A DNA stretch of 64,000 bases, taken from Raja brachyura. Taxonomy: Eukaryota. The notes beneath the pieces are model-generated. The model saw only the letters and a list, made by a program, of their open reading frames with translations, ran no database searches and had not been told where the DNA came from. The translations under genes were made by a program, and so were the position numbers. Shown here in pieces: positions 12,526-63,621 of the stretch. Within the stretch, counting starts at the first letter, position 1; every line of letters begins with the position of its first letter. The stretch spans positions 6,076,001 through 6,140,000 of the forward strand of contig OY740783.1 in the NCBI GenBank assembly GCA_963514005.1, read 5' to 3'.

Positions 12526-13380
12526 AATTTCTGAAATATTGGTCATAACTTTGGTGCAAAAATGCTCCAAAATAAGGCTCAGAATGCATCAGAGAGCATC
12601 TAAAACCCCTGCATTGAGGGACTTCAAGCTTTGCGCTCGTGATGTGCGCAGCGCGGACATTATTTCACATTAACATTTTTGTAATCCTGTCATGCCACCC
12701 CCCGTTTTGAAAAGCCTGATAATCCTGTCCGGGAAATCTCAGGTCACTTTACTATTGCTGCCAGTAGTGGCCAGAAAATAATCCATCTGGTCAGTTGCGA
12801 AAAACACATTGAGGAACATTGTTTTTGTGTTTATTTCAGATGTGAGCGCACCTGGACGCGACCGGCGCATTGATGTAAATAATCTCAGAAATAGAAGTCC
12901 CAGATTAGAACACTGACAGACAGAAACAGAATCTAATTGTCCCTACCAACGCAGTTCAGAATTATGCCGTGCGCCATGCAAATCTACAACCGATTCAAAA
13001 GCATGGTGAATGCTTCAGATGGTTTTCTGCTCGTCATCTGATAATATAATGGAGATTATATCCACGTTCACTTGAGGTAAAGAAATCCAGAACTGGTAGT
13101 TTGTGGGAACATTCCGAAGGCTGGAATGGGGAGGGAACAGTTCCTTGACCCAGCGCTCGCTCCATACCAACATTATTAAACTTCTCACCACGTCTCCCTG
13201 AACTGGCAATACCCGAATATCGATGTGAAGGAAACCATGTTCTGCCTGAGAGGCTGAGGATAGTGTGAGGCGGGAGACTTGTATCAACATGTAATATGTG
13301 TATTCAGTTATCGGATGGAAGTAAAGTAGCCTGAAGCTGGCACATGATGATCCCGGCCTAGTTGTGGGTGATGAGGCTGA

Positions 13381-41164: not shown

Positions 41165-44100
41165 AAATCGGAAGTGTCTGTGATGTAGTTGAACAAAGGG
41201 GACTATGAAGGCATGAGAGGGGAGCTGGCCATGGTAGACTGGAAAGGGATCCTAGCAGGAATGATGGTGGAACAGCAATGGCAGGAATTTCTGGGCATAA
41301 TCCGGAAGACGCAGGAGGGGAGTAGGAGGCAACCGTGGCTGACGAGAAGTTAGGGATAGAATAAAACTAAAATAAAAGATGTATAACACAGCAAAGAGTA
41401 GCTGGAAGCCAGAGGATTTGGAAACTTTCATAGGACAACAGAAGGAAACAAAACGGGCAATACGGGCTGAAAAGATGAAGTACGAAGTACTGGAGGACAG
41501 AGGACCTAAGGGGGTAAAGGAACTGAAAGAAATTTTCAATAGGCGAGAAATAGTATTGGGTAGGCTAATGGGACTGAAGGATGATAAATCCCATGGACCT
41601 GATGGTTTGCATCCCAGGGTCCTCAGGGAGGTGGCTCGAGAAATAGTGGACGCATTGATGATCATTTTCCAATGTTCAATAGATTCAGGATCAGTTCCTG
41701 TGGATAGCTACTGTTATCCCACTTTTCAAGAAAGGAGTGAGAGAGAAAGCGGGGAATTATAGACTAGTTAGCCTGACTTCGGTGGTGGGAAAGATGCTGG
41801 AGTTAACTATTAAAGAGGTACTAATGGAGCATTTGGATAGCAGTACAATTATTAGTCCAAGTCAACATGGATATATGAAAGGGAAATCATGCTTGACTAA
41901 TCTTCTGGAATTTTTTGAGGATGTGACAAGTAAAATGAATGAAGGGGTGCAAGTGGATGTAGTGTATCTAGACTTTCAGAAAGTATTTGATAAGGTCCCG
42001 CACGGGAGACTGGTGACTAAAATTACAGCATATGGTATTGGGGGTAGGGTGTTGACATGAATAGAAAATTGGTTGGCAGACCGGAAGCAAAGAGTAGGAG
42101 TGAACGGGTCCTTTTCAGATTGGCAGGCAGTGGCGAGTGAGTGCCGCAAGGCTTGGTGTTGGGGCCGCAACTGGTTACCATTTATATTAATGATTTGTTA
42201 GTGGGAATTAGGAGCAACACTAGCAAGTTTGTAGATGACACAAAGCTGGGTGGCAGTGTGAACTGTGAAGAGGATGTTAGGAGGTTGCAGGGTGACCTGG
42301 ACAGGTTGTGTGAGTGGGCAGATGCGTGGCAGATGCAGTATCTATATTACTAAAATCTGATCTTGACCGCTTTTGGCTCGTTGTGCTGTGATTTCCGAGA
42401 GAACACCACCACCTGCGGCCGTCATTTTTGGCCCACTCGTTCAGAGCCCCCCTCCGCCTTCCTGGACCAGAGGATTTTTCCCATCGATGAAAATTCAGAG
42501 ATATATTAATGTTTTTTAAAAATTCCCCATTCTCTCTGCTGCCCCTGCTGGAGGGAGGGGGAGGGACTATGAAACCAGGAAGTGGTGTGCCTCAGTCTCT
42601 GAAAGATGGAGGAAGCCAGAGGTTCACGTCTCTCTGATCTCTGAATAGCACTGAACACATGTCTACTCAACTGTGAGTGCCCTTAATGAGGTTTGAAAAT
42701 GAAAATTTCATTGGTTTGAAGTAAAAGGGCACTGCCTGCAAATGGTTGTTTGGCTGCTTTGGGTTGAAGATAAAAGGCACTACTGTAAATGGTGGCTTGG
42801 GTGCTTTGGGTTGAAGTTAAAAGGCACTACTGCAAATGGTGGCTTGGGTGCTTTGGGTTGAAGTTAAAAGGCACTACTCACTGCAAATAGTGGTTTGGCT
42901 GCTTTGGGTTGAAGTTCAAAGGCACTACTTACAGCAAATGGTGGTTTGGCTGCTTTGGGTTGAGGCAAAAAGGCACTACTTACTGCAAATGGTGGTTTGG
43001 CTGTTTTGGGTTGAGGCAAAAAGGCACTACTTACTGCAAATGGTGGTTTGGCTGCTTTGGGTTGAGGCAAAAAGGCACTACTTACTGCAAATGGTGGTTT
43101 GGCTGCTTTGGTTCAGGTTAAAAGGCACTACTTTCTGCAAATGGTGGTTTGGCTGCTTTGGTTTGAAGTTAAAATGCACTACTTACTGTAAATGGTGGTT
43201 TGGCTGCTTTGGGTTGAAGATAGCAGGAAGATTGTTCCCGATGTTGGGGAGGTCCAGGACATGGGGTCACAGCTTAAGGATAAGGGGGAAATCCTTTAGG
43301 ACCGAGATGAGAAGGACTTTTTTCACACAGAGAGTGGTGGGTCTCTGGAACTCTCTGCCACAGAGGGTAGTTGAGGCCAGTTTGAGGCCAGTTCATTGAC
43401 TATATTTAAGAGGGAGTTAGATGTGGCCCTTGTGGCTAAGGGGATCAGAGGGTATGGAGAGAAGGCAGGTACAGGATACTGAGTTGGATGATCAGCCATG
43501 ATCATATTGAATGGCGGTGCAGGCTCGAAGGGCCGAATGGCCTACTCCTGCACCTAATTTCTATGTATCTATGTTTCTATGTTTCTATAGGCACGACTTG
43601 CTGCAAATGGTGGTTGGCTGCTTTGGGTTGAAGTTAAAAGGCACTACTTACTGCAAATAATGGTTTGGCTGCTTTGGGTAACTTCCTGTTTGCACTGTAT
43701 AATGATTTTAGATAAAACGCTACTACTTATGGCTGTGATTTTTGGCCATCTTACTCAGTCGCCCTCCGCTCAGCAGGTGCAGAGGATTCTTCCCATCAAT
43801 TAAAAATAAAAGTGGTATTACTGTTTAAAAAATGTTGAGAGTCTCTCTCCTGCCAATCACGCCATGAAGGCCACACCTTTTCCAGGGGGACCAGCCTTCC
43901 TGTGTGAACATGGGACCCAACGGGTCCCACTTAGTCTAGTAATATAGATAAATGTGAGGATATCCACTTTGGTGGCAAAAACAAGCGGGCAGATTATTAT
44001 CTAAATTGGGGTTAGGTTAGGTAAGGGGGAGGTGCAGCGAGACCTGGGTGTCCTTGTACACCGGTCACTGAAAGTTGGCTTACAGGTACAGCAGACAGTG

Positions 44101-46920: not shown

Positions 46921-47415
46921 TGATTCCTCCATTGACCTCGTTTGCTCAAACATCCCTGCAAGTGGAGATTCAAGTGGGCAGCAAAATAATATTCTGAAGT
47001 GAATCCATAATTTAAAATCCCATCAATTTATTTGAATGAGAAATGAAGAAATAGACTCCTTCAGAGAATTCAGTTGATTCGCGCCAACTGCCAATATCTT
47101 TAAAACATCATCGCTGTTGAGAATGGTGTCTTCATTGCCTTGTTTGTGTTGCTCTAAAAATGGCTGGAAACAGAGATGAGCTGATTTAAATAAACGCTGA
47201 TTTCAACAGCCCCAGACCTAAGTTCGTTTACTGAAGGACAGAAACGGAGTCAATGTTTCCCGAGAGGTGCAAAACTGATAAAGTGAGAACGAAATGCAAA
47301 TCTCCCAACTGACTACTTCAGAGATATTTATTTTAAGTTGTCAACGTTCACTCGTAGAAAAAATAAACAAAGTTGAAGTGCATATGGATGATGGTAGTCA
47401 ATAATATTCCCTACA

Positions 47416-47574
47416 AAGGTACACAAAAGGCTGGAGAAACTCAGCGGGTGCAGCAGCATCTAAGGAGCGAAGGAGATATCTCCTTCGCTCCTTAGATGCT
47501 GCTGCACCCGCTGAGTTTCTCCAGCCTTTTGTGTACCTTCGATTCTCCAGCATCTGCAGTTCCTTCTTTAACAC
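47416..47574. repeat. Perfect 124-bp palindrome (47416-47539) of Penelope-type tail, flanked by a 16-bp near-perfect direct repeat
   Basis: Arms meet at GAT|ATC (47477/47478). AATATTCCCTACAAAG at 47403-18 versus AATACTCCCTACAAAG at 47575-90. Confidence 0.9.
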
Positions 47575-50379: not shown

Positions 50380-50556
50380 GGAGCCGTGTCTCAGCTCCGC
50401 CCGTTGCACCACTCGGTTTACAGGCCCCGCCCACAGCCACGCCCTCTGTTGCCGGGTATTTAATTCTCTCTAAGAGGGTCCGAAATCCATCTTCCTTGCA
50501 GTGGGTTTGTTGCGAGGTTCTGTACAGAAACAAACCGGGTCACACTTCCCAGCGGG
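50380..50556 (+). promoter_or_regulatory. Putative VH proximal promoter / 5'UTR
   Basis: GC-box-like CCCCGCCC/CCACGCCC and TATA-like TATTTAA (50457-63) about 100 bp before the ATG. No octamer; bounded upstream by HER1 tails. Confidence 0.5.
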
Positions 50557-50602
50557 ATGAGGTCGGCGGTTTCACTGAGTCTGTTCCTGGCGTTAATAGT
50601 CC
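50557..50602 (+). CDS. Ig heavy chain (IgM cluster) leader exon
   Basis: ATG at 50557 reads MRSAVSLSLFLALIV+c, then donor GTGAGT at 50603. Hydrophobic signal peptide of the elasmobranch VH leader type; phase 1. Confidence 0.93.
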
Positions 50603-50776: not shown

Positions 50777-51080
50777 ATGTCCATTCCGATGTCGTTCTAA
50801 CTCAGCCCAAGACAGCGACGGCCCGTCCTGGAGGCTCCATTACACTGGAATGTAAAACCAGCGGGTTCACTCTTAGCAGCTACGCAATGTATTTGGTCCG
50901 TCAGGTCCCTGGGCAGGGGCTGGAGTGGCTGATTTCCTACAACAGTTATTATAGCAAGAACATCGCTCCGGGGATAGAGAGCCGATTTACTCCGTCCAAA
51001 GACAATTCGAATAATATGTTCACCGTGACCGCCAGGGACCTGAGGATCGAAGACACCGCTGTCTATTACTGTGCGAGAGA
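50777..51080 (+). CDS. IGHV: Ig heavy chain variable (VH) exon, open reading frame
   Basis: Acceptor ttgcag, then (H)[100 protein letters not shown]. Both Cys and the YYC motif are present; heptamer follows. Confidence 0.97.
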
Positions 51081-51119
51081 CACAGTGTGAGGATTCAGTG
51101 ACAAGAGCGGCACGTTGGG
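51081..51119 (+). promoter_or_regulatory. VH 3' recombination signal sequence, atypical
   Basis: Perfect heptamer CACAGTG at 51081-51087. At 23-bp spacing the sequence is CACGTTGGG (not a nonamer). Nonamer-like ACAAGAGCG lies at 51101-51109, giving a 13-bp spacer. Confidence 0.8.
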
Positions 51120-51427: not shown

Positions 51428-51583
51428 TTCCAGTTCATTGGCTATATTTAAGCGGGAGTTAGATGTGGCCCTTGTGGCTAAGGGGATCAGAGGGTATGGA
51501 GAGAAGGCAGGTACGGGATACTGCGTTGGATGATCGAAGGGCCGAATGGCCTACTCCTACACCTATTTTCTATGTTTCTATGT
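51428..51583 (+). mobile_element. HER1 3' fragment inside the V-D interval
   Basis: ccagttcattggctatatttaag...cctattttctatgtttctatg. Confidence 0.85.
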
Positions 51584-51660
51584 TCTCTGTGAACTGCTGG
51601 GCCATTTAAAATCGTGTCGAAGGCCATTTCAAATGAAACCCAAGTGTGAACTGTATGGGA

Positions 51661-51688
51661 GGTTTTTGTGTGGGTCTGTCTCACTGTG
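51661..51688 (-). promoter_or_regulatory. Canonical 12-bp-spacer RSS 5' of the D segment
   Basis: Plus-strand GGTTTTTGT (51661-69), 12 nt spacer (gtgggtctgtct), CACTGTG (51682-88). Both motifs are perfect consensus. Confidence 0.95.
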
Positions 51689-51758
51689 TATGCGGTGGGT
51701 AGAATACTTACGGGTTTTGACTACTGGGGAGGAGGCACCATGTTGACCATAACCAACG
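51689..51758 (+). CDS. IGHJ: Fused D(-D)-JH segment
   Basis: Reads YAVGRILTGFDYWGGGTMLTITN+g, then donor GTAAG at 51759. FDYWGxGT J motif; no heptamer or nonamer between the D-like and J parts. Confidence 0.9.
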
Positions 51759-53284
51759 GTAAGAAACTTCATCCTATTCAGTCTCTAGATGTATCCAGTT
51801 GTAATTTTAATATATATTTCCAATAATTGTCTTCTGCATTAATTACCAATTCATTGCAATGTTGGATCGATGTTGCTTTAGAATGTTATGTGATTTCGCT
51901 GCAGTAAGATTACCAAATTAAACGTGCCTTGTATGCTATGACTTCGATCCTTTGATGATGGAACGGGTGTGATTTAGTTCCTAATTAGTCGAAAAATGTG
52001 CTTGAATTTGCCTTCACCATGCTTTCAAATTGTTTGAGACTGTTGTTGTCCAAGATCAGCGATGCATCTAACTGTGTTTTCTGATCAACAGCGGGTGCTT
52101 TGTCTCAGTTTGTTTGTTCTCAACGCATATTTCTCAACACATGGATTTAAGAGAGAGTTAGATAGAGCTCTAGGGACTAGTGGAATCAAGGGATATGGGG
52201 AGAAGGCAGGCACGGGTTATTGATTGGGGATGATCAGCCATGATCACAATGAATGGCGGTGCTGGCTCGAAGGGCCGAATGGCCTCTTCCTGCACCTATT
52301 TTCTATGTTTTTATGTTTCTATATGAAACAAACGATAGAAAGGGATAAATCCTGGGTGTAAAATGTCCAAGTTTTCTATATAAGAAGTGTATGTATTAAT
52401 TGGTGGAATCGCATTGCTACCTTTGATCCAATGGCTAACAAAACTTGCATTGAAGATGTATCATTTTCTTGCAGCAAAGCACAGAAGTGCAAAGTTCTTT
52501 AGTAACTTGTCAGTTTCTTTGTTGAACTCAATTAAGGAGCATGTTGCAATCAAGATCGCTTGAACAATGGGTTGGGAAGGCGGTGTGTCTCCATATCGTG
52601 GAAGCATTGGTAATCACTCTCCAATGTCCTATACATTCTGCATCAGTTCCTGTGGATTAAGGGTAGATAATGCTATCCCACTTTTCAAGATAGGAGGGAG
52701 AGAGAAAGCAGGGAATGACAGAGCAGTTGGCCTGACATCGGTAGTGGGAGAGATGCTGGAGTCAATTAGCAAATAAGTAACATCGGCGCGTTTGGTTAGC
52801 AGTAACAGGATCGATCTATTGTCTATGTATCTATGTATTGGTGGAGTCCATTTGTTATTGTGTTATTTCAACAATGATTGGCTCGGCCGTCTTTGGGCCA
52901 ATGAATTTCGGTGGTCTATGGACAGAGATATTTGGATTTTTGTGAAGAGTTTCAGTCAATGTGTGTTGTGTGATTCAGCCCATCAGCGGTATCATTCAGC
53001 CGGTCATTGCGGGAGACGATGGTGTTGCACAATTGGATGTTTTTGTATGTTCAATTCGAATGGCAACGACCGGGTATTGCTGTCGGATTGGGTTATTTCA
53101 ATAAACGCAAAGAAGATATATGTTTAAAAATAAGCAGGAATTGATGTAAATTAATAAGACCAATACATTCTGCAAACACTTAAAGGGTCAGGCAACCTGC
53201 GGCGAAAGTCAAATCTCAGGCAGGGGACCAGAAAGACAGCTGGTAGCGCCAGAGCGCCAACTACGTTTCCGAAATCAGTGGCAG

Positions 53285-57435: not shown

Positions 57436-57732
57436 CGGCTGATTCCCCCCCCAGCCCCTTCATTCTCTTCACGTGCGAGGATCGCGGCTCCAGTGGTTCG
57501 TTCACCTACGGTTGTTTGGCGTTGGGCTATTCCCCTGCGGGCGCCAGTGTCTCTTGGAAGAAAGATGATACAGACCTGGTCGATGGAGTGAAGGAATACC
57601 CGGCAGTGTTCAATAAGTTGGGAACTTACACCCGGAGCAGCGAGTTAACCATCACAGAGGCAGTGGCTGGGGGAAGCGACATCTTCTGTGTGGTTCGGCA
57701 CAACCAAAAAGAGTATAAAGTGAAAGTACCAG
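57436..57732 (+). CDS. IGHM: IgM CH1 exon
   Basis: Acceptor ttgcag; AADSPPSPFILFTCEDRGSSGSFTYGCLALGYSPAGASVSWKK...TYTRSSELTI...DIFCVVRHNQKEYKVKVP; donor GT at 57733. C1-set Cys/Trp/Cys plus an N-terminal Cys suited to light-chain linkage. Confidence 0.92.
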
Positions 57733-57873: not shown

Positions 57874-58007
57874 NNNNNNNNNNNNNNNNNNNNNNNNNNN
57901 NNNNNNNNNNNNNNNNNNNNNNNNNNNNNNNNNNNNNNNNNNNNNNNNNNNNNNNNNNNNNNNNNNNNNNNNNNNNNNNNNNNNNNNNNNNNNNNNNNNN
58001 NNNNNNN
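57874..58007. other. Assembly gap (134 N) in the CH1-CH2 intron
   Basis: Run of N. Confidence 1.
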
Positions 58008-59972: not shown

Positions 59973-60287
59973 AACATGTGGTATATCATCCAACCGTCAC
60001 CATTACCGTAACTTCCCTTGATGAAATCAAGCGCAGCAAAAAAGCGATCGCCGTGTGTTTGGTCAACGATTTCACCCCAGCAAAATTTGCTGTGAACTGG
60101 CTGAAGAATGGAAAGCAAGTGGATTCTGGCATCGTCACCTCTCCCGCCTTCCAGGTGAACGTTAACGGTAACTTCTCAGCGACCAGCCAGTTGACAATCC
60201 CAGCTCTAGAGTGGAACGGACGTGCCGTCTATACCTGCCAAGTCAACCATGAAAAACATATAAAAAGCCAAAATATCAGTAGGCAAG
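59973..60287 (+). CDS. IGHM: IgM CH2 exon
   Basis: Acceptor tttcag; EHVVYHPTVTIT...AVCLVNDFTPAKFAVNWLKNG...FSATSQL...YTCQVNH...ISRQ; donor GTAAG. Confidence 0.95.
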
Positions 60288-60748: not shown

Positions 60749-61051
60749 ATGATGGTCCCTGCGACGAACTGAAGATTACAATCCTTCCACCACCTGTTGA
60801 ACAAGAGTTAATGGAGATGACCGTGACGTTAACCTGTCTGGTATCCGATGCACCTTACGGTATCACAGTATCTTGGAAGCGCATAAAGGTGCCTTTGGCA
60901 TTAGATATCCAGTCCACAGAACATGGGGAAATCGTAGAGAGCAAAGTAAACATTTCGACTCGTGACTGGCTGAGTGGGGATTATTTCGAATGTGTGGTGA
61001 GCCATGAAGATCTGCCGTATCCAAAATCTAAACAAATCAACTGGAAGAAAG
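60749..61051 (+). CDS. IGHM: IgM CH3 exon
   Basis: Acceptor ctatag; DDGPCDELKITILPPPVEQELMEMTVTLTCLVSDAPYGITVSWKR...DWLSGDYFECVVSHEDLPYP...WKK; donor GTGAG. Confidence 0.95.
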
Positions 61052-63229: not shown

Positions 63230-63621
63230 GTCAACATCTGCTGACACCGTCCGTCTCAGTCCTTCTGCCGCCGACAGAAGAGATCTCCGCGCACAAGACT
63301 ATCACCCTCACCTGCTTTGTGAGAGGATTCTCCCCTCGCAGGGTCTTCGTAACGTGGACGCATGATGACAAGCGGGTGCATTGGAGCAAGTACAAGAACA
63401 CCGAGGTGGTGGCGGAGAACGGCAATGAAACATTCTTCACCTACAGCCTGTTATCCGTTGGGGCAGCGGAGTGGGCTAGCGGAGCCTCCTTCTCCTGTCT
63501 GGTGGGGCACGAAGCACTCCCCATGAAGACCATTGTCAGAACGGTCAATAAGTCTAGCGGTAAACCCAGTTTTGTCAACGTTTCCCTTGTATTGATGGAC
63601 ACTGTCAATTCCTGTCAATAA
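63230..63621 (+). CDS. IGHM: IgM CH4 exon plus secretory tailpiece
   Basis: [37 protein letters not shown]...[13 protein letters not shown]...[23 protein letters not shown]. Typical elasmobranch mu tailpiece with NVS glycan site and penultimate Cys; internal donor G|GTAAAC at 63560 for the membrane form. Confidence 0.97.

What the first reader, a model, noticed from the sequence alone, without database searches (positions are those of the whole stretch)
51661..51763. IgM cluster with D(-D)-J already joined while V is unjoined
Seen: a perfect 12-RSS is followed by 70 nt running in frame into a JH (YAVGRILTGFDYWGGGTMLTITN|GT). There is no D 3' RSS, no second D cassette and no J RSS. Established: elasmobranch IgM clusters are V-D1-D2-J with segments a few hundred bp apart, JH carries a 22/23-RSS, and germline-joined clusters are mostly described as VD, VDD or VDJ. 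Inference: the 5' part (TATGCGGTGGGT) resembles shark D1 and ATACT resembles a trimmed D2, with possible N-like bases between them. After removing TE insertions the V-to-RSS distance is about 0.4 kb, as expected for V-D1. This looks like a fixed RAG product of V / DDJ type, with most of CDR3 hard-wired and only one junction left to diversify.
Basis: partly seen in the sequence, partly recalled or inferred. Interest (0 to 1): 0.9.

Follow-up and report, generated by a model that had tools for sequence, protein, structure and literature searches.

The report
Shark-type IgM gene with pre-joined D-D-J
In this cartilaginous-fish antibody (IgM) gene cluster the two D segments and the J segment are already fused in the assembled DNA while the V segment is still separate; this is a little-described variant of the known "germline-joined" antibody genes of sharks and rays, and this copy is probably crippled.

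Summary
A consensus-perfect 12-spacer RSS (51661-51688) abuts 70 nt of open coding sequence. That sequence runs in frame through the only J motif of the cluster (FDYWGGGT) to a GT splice donor. No other RSS, D or J lies between VH and Cmu1. The surroundings are a complete IgM minilocus: leader, VH, and four open C1-set exons with a mu tailpiece.

In published nurse-shark germline genes J starts only 5 nt before TTTGA. Here 27 nt precede TTTGAC. They carry the D1 3' end (GTGGGT) and the D2 core (ATACTT) in that order, though the statistics are modest. Without a 166-nt repeat insertion, the V-to-RSS gap is 407 nt, the usual V-D1 spacing. The best reading is a RAG-made V / D1-D2-J cluster.

Germline status could not be tested. 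An unchecked scan note reports a second cluster of the same layout 421 kb upstream.

"One junction left to diversify" is doubtful for this copy. The V RSS has no nonamer at 22-23 nt, the invariant V-domain Trp is Leu, and no octamer lies within 3.2 kb of the leader.

I rate it a new variant of a known kind, of moderate interest.

The parts
50557..50602 (+). Leader exon (ATG to GT donor, 46 nt, phase 1)
   Evidence: Read directly. MRSAVSLSLFLALIV resembles the leaders of shark VH proteins P0003 and P0008.
50777..51080 (+). VH exon, unrearranged. It is open and has Cys22 and the YYCAR end, but Leu stands in place of the invariant Trp41 (TTG at 50896-50898).
   Evidence: Pfam V-set, E 1.6e-9. It is 63% identical to a Chiloscyllium punctatum VH. 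All 7 aligned homologues have W at that column.
51081..51109 (+). VH RSS: heptamer CACAGTG at 51081-51087, then only a 6/9 nonamer-like ACAAGAGCG after a 13-nt spacer. Nothing nonamer-like lies at 22-23 nt.
   Evidence: by direct reading.
51430..51595 (.). Repeat (LINE/SINE 3'-tail) insertion in the V-D intersegment
   Evidence: Local blastn found 33 other copies in the window at 91-97% identity.
51661..51688 (+). Perfect 12-RSS in the nonamer-spacer-heptamer orientation, i.e. the 5' signal of a D (inferred to be D1)
   Evidence: 7/7 heptamer, 9/9 nonamer, 12-nt spacer.
51689..51700 (+). D1-like part, TATGCGGTGGGT. It abuts the heptamer, and its 3' GTGGGT matches the 3' end of nurse-shark D1.
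   Evidence: The boundaries are inferred.
51701..51715 (+). Junction plus D2-like part, AGAATACTTACGGGT. It contains ATACTT, the core of nurse-shark D2 (Group 5).
   Evidence: The boundaries and any N/P bases are inferred.
51716..51758 (+). JH part (TTTGACTACTGGGG... = FDYWGGGTMLTITN), ending in phase 1
   Evidence: Nurse-shark J begins 5 nt before TTTGA.
51759..51764 (+). Splice donor GTAAGA of the J-C intron
57436..57732 (+). Cmu1 exon (297 nt, phase 1 in and out, open)
   Evidence: Pfam C1-set, E 4e-10.
59973..60287 (+). Cmu2 exon
   Evidence: C1-set, E 4e-20.
60749..61051 (+). Cmu3 exon
   Evidence: C1-set, E 7e-9.
63230..63621 (+). Cmu4 exon with secretory tailpiece (...[20 protein letters not shown], then stop)
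   Evidence: C1-set, E 6e-21. The best PDB matches are Ig mu Cmu4 plus tailpiece, E 1e-45.

Best explanation
The 70-nt block is a fused D1-D2-J element inside an otherwise unrearranged IgM minilocus (leader, VH, then a 12-RSS with D-D-J, then Cmu1-4).

The most likely origin is two deletional RAG joins, D1 to D2 and D2 to J, in the germ line of an ancestor. These removed both intersegment stretches and four RSSs and left only the 5' 12-RSS of D1.

Shown:
- the anatomy;
- the IgM identity;
- the excess length over known shark J segments;
- the V-D1-like spacing.

Inferred:
- the D1/D2 assignment;
- RAG as the agent;
- inheritance through the germ line.

In principle a lymphocyte would need a single V-to-DDJ join to complete the V exon. 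Most of CDR3 (YAVGRILTGFDY) would then be hard-wired.

In this copy that last step looks handicapped:
- the VH RSS has lost its 23-spacer nonamer, so the pair would be 13/12;
- the invariant Trp41 of the V domain is Leu;
- no octamer lies within 3.2 kb upstream of the leader.

I therefore think this cluster is a poorly rearranging or non-rearranging relic (an 'ORF' gene in IMGT terms) rather than an active one-step antibody gene.
For: - Perfect 12-RSS followed by open coding into the only J motif and a GT donor.
- V-set plus four C1-set exons, all open and in matching phase, with a mu tailpiece.
- Nurse-shark germline references from PMC2435157 Fig S1/S11: J starts 5 nt before TTTGA in all five gene groups. 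D1 is ATACTACAGTGGGT and D2 is ACATACT(G/T)GGG...
- Here 27 nt precede TTTGAC. GTGGGT lies at 51695-51700 and ATACTT at 51704-51709.
- A global alignment to Group 5 D1+D2+J beat all but 2 of 2000 shuffles.
- The V-to-RSS gap is 407 nt once the 166-nt repeat is removed. PMC2435157 gives about 400 bp between segments and 6.3-6.8 kb from J to Cmu1. Here J to Cmu1 is 5.7 kb.
- V-DDJ is a real RAG product in shark lymphocytes.
- Germline joining by RAG in germ cells is the accepted origin of joined shark Ig genes.
- For the handicap: V RSS; W to L; octamers only at 47294, 53972 and 56384.
Against: - No unjoined cluster of the same species could be compared, so the J boundary and the D assignment rest on another species.
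- With other nurse-shark references the alignment was not better than shuffles (354/2000, 385/2000 and 518/2000). A joint 6-mer test gave p about 0.02.
- Germline status is untested.
- All four C exons and the V frame are intact, which does not fit a long-dead pseudogene.
- Violations of the 12/23 rule can still support B-cell development in mice (abstract of PMC1237122, listed), so the cluster may not be inert.
Confidence: 0.72

Rival explanations
1. This is a single-D join. D1 was joined directly to J and D2 was deleted, or D2 alone was joined to J. The 15 nt between GTGGGT and TTTGAC would then be J flank plus N/P bases and not D2.
For: - The D2 match is only the 6-mer ATACTT plus GGGT after a 2-nt gap.
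- With composition-matched shuffles, a 6-mer match to one of five D2 references occurs in 29% of trials.
Against: - Fifteen non-templated bases is long for a join thought to occur in germ cells.
- ATACT is shared by most nurse-shark D2 references, and it lies in the expected place after the D1 end.
- The total extra length (22 nt) fits two trimmed 14-nt D segments.
Confidence: 0.12
2. This is an ordinary, unusually long JH that carries a 12-RSS in this lineage.
For: - No same-species comparison was possible.
- From my own knowledge, long JH segments exist: human JH6 is 63 nt.
Against: - All five nurse-shark JH groups start 5 nt before TTTGA.
- The reviews read here describe VH-D1-D2-JH clusters.
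- The extra 5' part carries D1-like and D2-like motifs in order.
- An unchecked scan note reports a complete L-V-D-D-J cluster in the same genome (s1-880931).
Confidence: 0.06
3. This is a somatic V-DDJ intermediate, or a mis-assembly, captured from lymphocyte-containing tissue. It is not an inherited configuration.
For: - V-DDJ is a frequent partial rearrangement in nurse-shark thymocytes and in some gene groups.
- No read-level check was possible.
Against: - Somatic junctions differ from cell to cell and would not form the consensus of an assembly. This is inference.
- The junction shows little or no N addition, unlike the one somatic V-DDJ clone listed (JSTh32, which has 17 and 9 N/P bases).
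- A repeat insertion and the decayed V features show that the locus has its own evolutionary history.
- An unchecked scan note reports a second cluster with the same layout 421 kb upstream (s1-881059).
Confidence: 0.07

Closest known systems
Germline-joined IgH clusters of cartilaginous fishes (VD-J, VD-DJ, VDJ; e.g. horn shark, skates, nurse-shark IgM1gj)
   Same: It is the same kind of locus, a V-D-D-J-Cmu minilocus. It shows the same signature: segments fused exactly where RSS pairs stood, with coding sequence kept open. It has the same presumed cause, RAG activity in germ cells.
   Different: The reviews and papers read here list VD-J, VD-DJ and VDJ. In all of these V is joined to D. Here V is the one segment left out, and the retained signal is the 5' 12-RSS of the fused D-D-J. 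I found no description of a germline V-DDJ cluster in the library. Older subscription papers, such as Kokubu 1988 and Harding 1990, were not held.
Somatic V-DDJ ('2R') intermediate of nurse-shark IgH rearrangement (PMC2435157)
   Same: The configuration is identical: germline V, then D1-D2-J fused behind the D1 5' RSS.
   Different: That product is made in single lymphocytes and carries long N/P regions. Here the configuration sits in a genome assembly, has a compact junction, and is presumably inherited.
Mammalian DJH intermediate
   Same: A D-J fusion that keeps the 5' 12-RSS of D and awaits V-to-DJ joining (Figure 1 legend of PMC2435157).
   Different: The mammalian form is somatic, uses one D, and sits in a translocon locus with many V segments. 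Here there is a single V 0.6 kb upstream. No in-frame ATG precedes the D part, so no Dmu-like product is expected (direct reading).

Membership tests
IgM heavy-chain minilocus of cartilaginous fishes | Leader, VH exon, and four C1-set constant exons with a mu secretory tailpiece, on one strand within about 15 kb | tested here: met
   VH is 47-63% identical to shark and chimaera VH.
Germline-joined Ig cluster | Segments contiguous and in frame, with the RSS pairs and intersegment DNA between them absent | tested here: met
   There is no heptamer or nonamer inside 51689-51758. There is only one J motif and one good RSS between V and Cmu1.
Germline-joined Ig cluster | The fused block contains recognisable D-derived sequence in addition to J | tested here: inconclusive
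   The block has 22 nt more than the nurse-shark J 5' flank, and GTGGGT and ATACTT lie in order. Shuffle tests gave p from 0.001 to 0.26 depending on the reference. No same-species D or J was available.
Germline-joined Ig cluster | Present in non-lymphoid or germ-cell DNA and in more than one individual | not testable with these tools
Protein searches with ORFs spanning the junction and a metagenome pattern scan were blank.
Functional rearranging VH gene (IMGT 'functional') | V RSS with heptamer, 22-23 nt spacer and nonamer | tested here: not met
   The heptamer is perfect. No nonamer lies at 21-24 nt, and only ACAAGAGCG (6/9) lies at 13 nt.
Functional rearranging VH gene (IMGT 'functional') | Conserved Cys23, Trp41 and Cys104 of the V domain | tested here: not met
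   Both Cys are present. Trp41 is Leu (MYLVRQ), whereas all 7 aligned homologues have W.
Functional rearranging VH gene (IMGT 'functional') | Octamer (ATGCAAAT) promoter shortly upstream of the leader | tested here: not met
   The nearest upstream octamer is at 47294, which is 3.26 kb from the ATG, with repeat copies in between. A TATA-like TATTTAA lies at 50458.

The most novel reading that the evidence does not exclude
V / D-D-J may be an inherited, duplicated class of IgM cluster in this species. An unchecked note reports a second copy 421 kb upstream. On this reading the class is kept by selection and completes its V exon by a single join between a 13-spaced V signal and a 12-RSS. This would be a natural exception to the 12/23 rule that yields a semi-invariant CDR3, perhaps used early in life like nurse-shark IgM1gj.
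Probability: 0.1. Interest if true: 0.7.

Novelty: new variant of a known kind. Interest (0 to 1): 0.42.

Why it matters
Germline-joined antibody genes of sharks and rays are the main natural evidence that RAG can act in germ cells and reshape antigen-receptor loci.

The described forms have V joined to D. A fixed V / DDJ cluster would show that germ-line joining can start at the J end, as it does in some shark lymphocyte gene groups. It would also give a natural substrate with one remaining junction.

If the sister cluster is real, the pair could date the event. It could also show whether such clusters decay (W41L, lost nonamer) or are kept. As it stands, this copy looks more like a record of a past RAG event than a working gene.

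Tried and rejected
1. Read-level check.
- The look-up of sequencing runs listed 20 partial holders, none holding half of the words or more and none on record as RNA.
- I therefore have no evidence on germline status, other individuals or expression.
- The V queries stop at 51057, and the local blast query starts at 51094.

3. Protein searches. The 66-aa ORF and the 52-aa J-frame ORF that span RSS plus DDJ found no candidates. The blank is uninformative, because small ORFs of eukaryote contigs seem not to be in that collection.

4. An exact 27-mer of the junction in JGI metagenome contigs gave 0 matches.

5. Older primary papers (Kokubu 1988, Harding 1990) are not held. Hinds-Frey 1993 is held only as abstract and references. 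One broad paper search returned only noise.

6. The search of earlier findings by sequence was blank, which means nothing according to the operators.

7. A second RSS-like site at 52935-52963 (8/9 nonamer, 13-nt spacer, CAATGTG) has no D- or J-like coding sequence behind it. It is at the level of chance hits in the scan.

Exons were searched one by one by reference.

Full report
**What is there**

At 51661-51688 the + strand reads GGTTTTTGT, 12 nt, CACTGTG. This is a nonamer-spacer-heptamer signal matching the consensus at all 16 specified bases. From base composition I estimate about 3e-5 such sites per 64-kb window on both strands.

It is followed at once by 70 nt (51689-51758) of open reading frame, YAVGRILTGFDYWGGGTMLTITN plus one base, and then GTAAG. 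This is the only [WF]GxG[TS] joining motif in the cluster. The block holds no internal heptamer. Between V and Cmu1 there is no other credible RSS.

**Surroundings**

The stretch belongs to a complete heavy-chain minilocus on the + strand.

| Element | Coordinates |
|---|---|
| Leader | 50557-50602 |
| VH exon | 50777-51080 |
| Fused D-D-J block | 51689-51758 |
| Cmu1 | 57436-57732 |
| Cmu2 | 59973-60287 |
| Cmu3 | 60749-61051 |
| Cmu4 with tailpiece and stop | 63230-63621 |

- All exons are open, and all junctions are phase 1.
- Pfam gives V-set for the V exon and C1-set for all four C exons.
- The last exon's best solved relatives are Ig mu Cmu4 plus tailpiece, E about 1e-45.
- The V exon, queried only up to 51057, is 47-63% identical to VH of bamboo shark, cat shark, horn shark, whale shark and elephant fish.

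So this is an IgM cluster of a cartilaginous fish whose own sequences are not in the protein collection.

**Is the block D(D)J or just a long J?**

No unjoined cluster of this species could be fetched, so I used published germline references. Figures S1 and S11 of PMC2435157 give nurse-shark D1 (ATACTACAGTGGGT), D2 (ACATACTGGGATAG, ACATACTTGGGTGG and others) and the 5' flank of JH for five gene groups.

- In all five groups J starts only 5 nt before the TTTGA/TTCGC that begins the FDY-type codons.
- Here 27 nt lie between the heptamer and TTTGAC, which is 22 nt more.
- The first 12 nt, TATGCGGTGGGT, end in GTGGGT, the exact 3' end of D1. They abut the heptamer as an untouched D 5' end would.
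- After three bases comes ATACTT, the D2 core, followed by ACGGGT.

The statistics are modest:
- A joint 6-mer test against composition-matched shuffles gave 2%.
- A global alignment to concatenated D1+D2+J beat all but 2 of 2000 shuffles for the Group 5 reference.
- For three other references it was not better than 18-26% of shuffles.

The spacing agrees with the reading. The V-to-RSS gap is 573 nt, of which 51430-51595 is a repeat with 33 other copies in the window. That leaves 407 nt. PMC2435157 gives about 400 bp between segments and 6.3-6.8 kb from J to Cmu1. Here J to Cmu1 is 5.7 kb.

From my own knowledge, not from a tool: shark JH carries a 22/23-RSS, and D1 carries a 12-RSS on its 5' side. 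On that basis the retained signal is the D1 5' signal.

Taken together, a fused D1-D2-J is the best reading. A D1-J or D2-J join with junctional bases is a minor variant of it. An ordinary long J with a 12-RSS is unlikely.

**How it arose and how it would work**

The precise loss of everything between coding ends, with one outer RSS intact, is the signature of two deletional V(D)J joins.

- The same V-DDJ product is made somatically in nurse-shark lymphocytes and is prominent in one gene group.
- Joined Ig genes in shark germ lines are attributed to RAG activity in germ cells.
- The junction here is compact. The one somatic V-DDJ clone listed in the paper carries 17 and 9 N/P bases.

In principle one V-to-DDJ join would complete the gene, with only the V-D1 junction variable.

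**Why this copy is probably handicapped**

1. After the perfect V heptamer (51081-51087) there is no nonamer at 21-24 nt. There is only a 6/9 match after 13 nt. The join would therefore pair 13-spacer and 12-spacer signals.
2. The invariant Trp41 of the V domain is Leu (MYLVRQ), whereas all seven aligned homologues have Trp.
3. The nearest upstream octamer is 3.26 kb from the leader ATG, with repeat copies in between.

Against a long-dead gene, every exon is still open. The rule violation is also not absolute in vivo (PMC1237122, abstract).

**Germline or somatic?**

This could not be tested.

- The look-up of sequencing runs listed only partial holders, and none on record as RNA.
I worked beside those places afterwards.
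- ORF-based protein searches and a metagenome pattern scan were blank.

The arguments for inheritance are indirect. Polyclonal somatic junctions do not assemble into a consensus. The locus also shows its own history, with a repeat insertion and decayed V features. Unchecked first-stage notes of this scan report another 'pre-joined D(D)J behind an unrearranged V' 421 kb upstream, with a V RSS that also lacks a 23-spacer nonamer. They also report an unjoined L-V-D-D-J cluster 706 kb upstream. These are leads and I do not count them as support.

**Comparison with what is known**

Germline-joined heavy-chain clusters have been known in horn shark, skates and chimaeras since the 1980s. The reviews and papers I could read list VD-J, VD-DJ and VDJ, and IgM1gj as an expressed VDJ example. 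I found no description of a germline V-DDJ cluster. Several older primary papers are not held, so I cannot exclude priority elsewhere.

I rate it a new variant of a known kind. It is of moderate interest as a record that germ-line joining can proceed from the J end. The interest is lowered by the lack of germline proof and by the signs that this copy is not a working gene.

Noticed in passing
window 51081-51119: The VH RSS has a perfect heptamer but no nonamer at 22-23 nt. Only ACAAGAGCG (6/9) follows, after a 13-nt spacer. This is also the subject of scan note s1-881081.
   Followed up: partly
window 50896-50898: The invariant Trp41 codon of the VH domain is TTG (Leu). All seven aligned shark and chimaera VH sequences have Trp there.
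   Followed up: yes
window 53972 and 56384: Octamers ATTTGCAT and ATGCAAAT lie in the J-Cmu1 intron and may be enhancer elements (compare scan note s1-881092). No octamer lies between 47294 and the leader at 50557.
   Followed up: partly
window 52935-52963: An RSS-like site, GATTTTTGT, 13 nt, CAATGTG, lies 1.2 kb into the J-C intron in the same orientation as the D signal. No D- or J-like coding sequence follows it. It is at chance level in my scan.
   Followed up: partly
window 47425-47530: A near-perfect palindrome of about 100 nt (two arms of roughly 45-50 nt facing each other around GATATC). It lies about 130 nt downstream of the octamer at 47294 and is probably a transposon end or foldback element.
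   Followed up: no
window 12700-13200 versus 47020-47520: The two octamer-containing stretches flagged by scan note s1-881124 align only weakly (69% column identity with many gaps). The shared blocks lie around ACTGA..GACAGAAAC and ATGCAAATCT.
   Followed up: partly
window 42836-43400: A tandemly repeated stretch that translates as reiterated KRHYLLQMVVWLLWVEA-like units, next to LINE fragments.
   Followed up: no
window 57874-58007: An assembly gap (134 N) lies in the Cmu1-Cmu2 intron. I left it as it is, and it touches no exon.
   Followed up: no
protein P0012 (Rhincodon typus): A whale-shark 'Ig heavy chain V region' protein reads straight through ...YYCARDWGGSLHYWGQETMVTVTA. It looks like a germline-joined VDJ gene model.
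   Followed up: no
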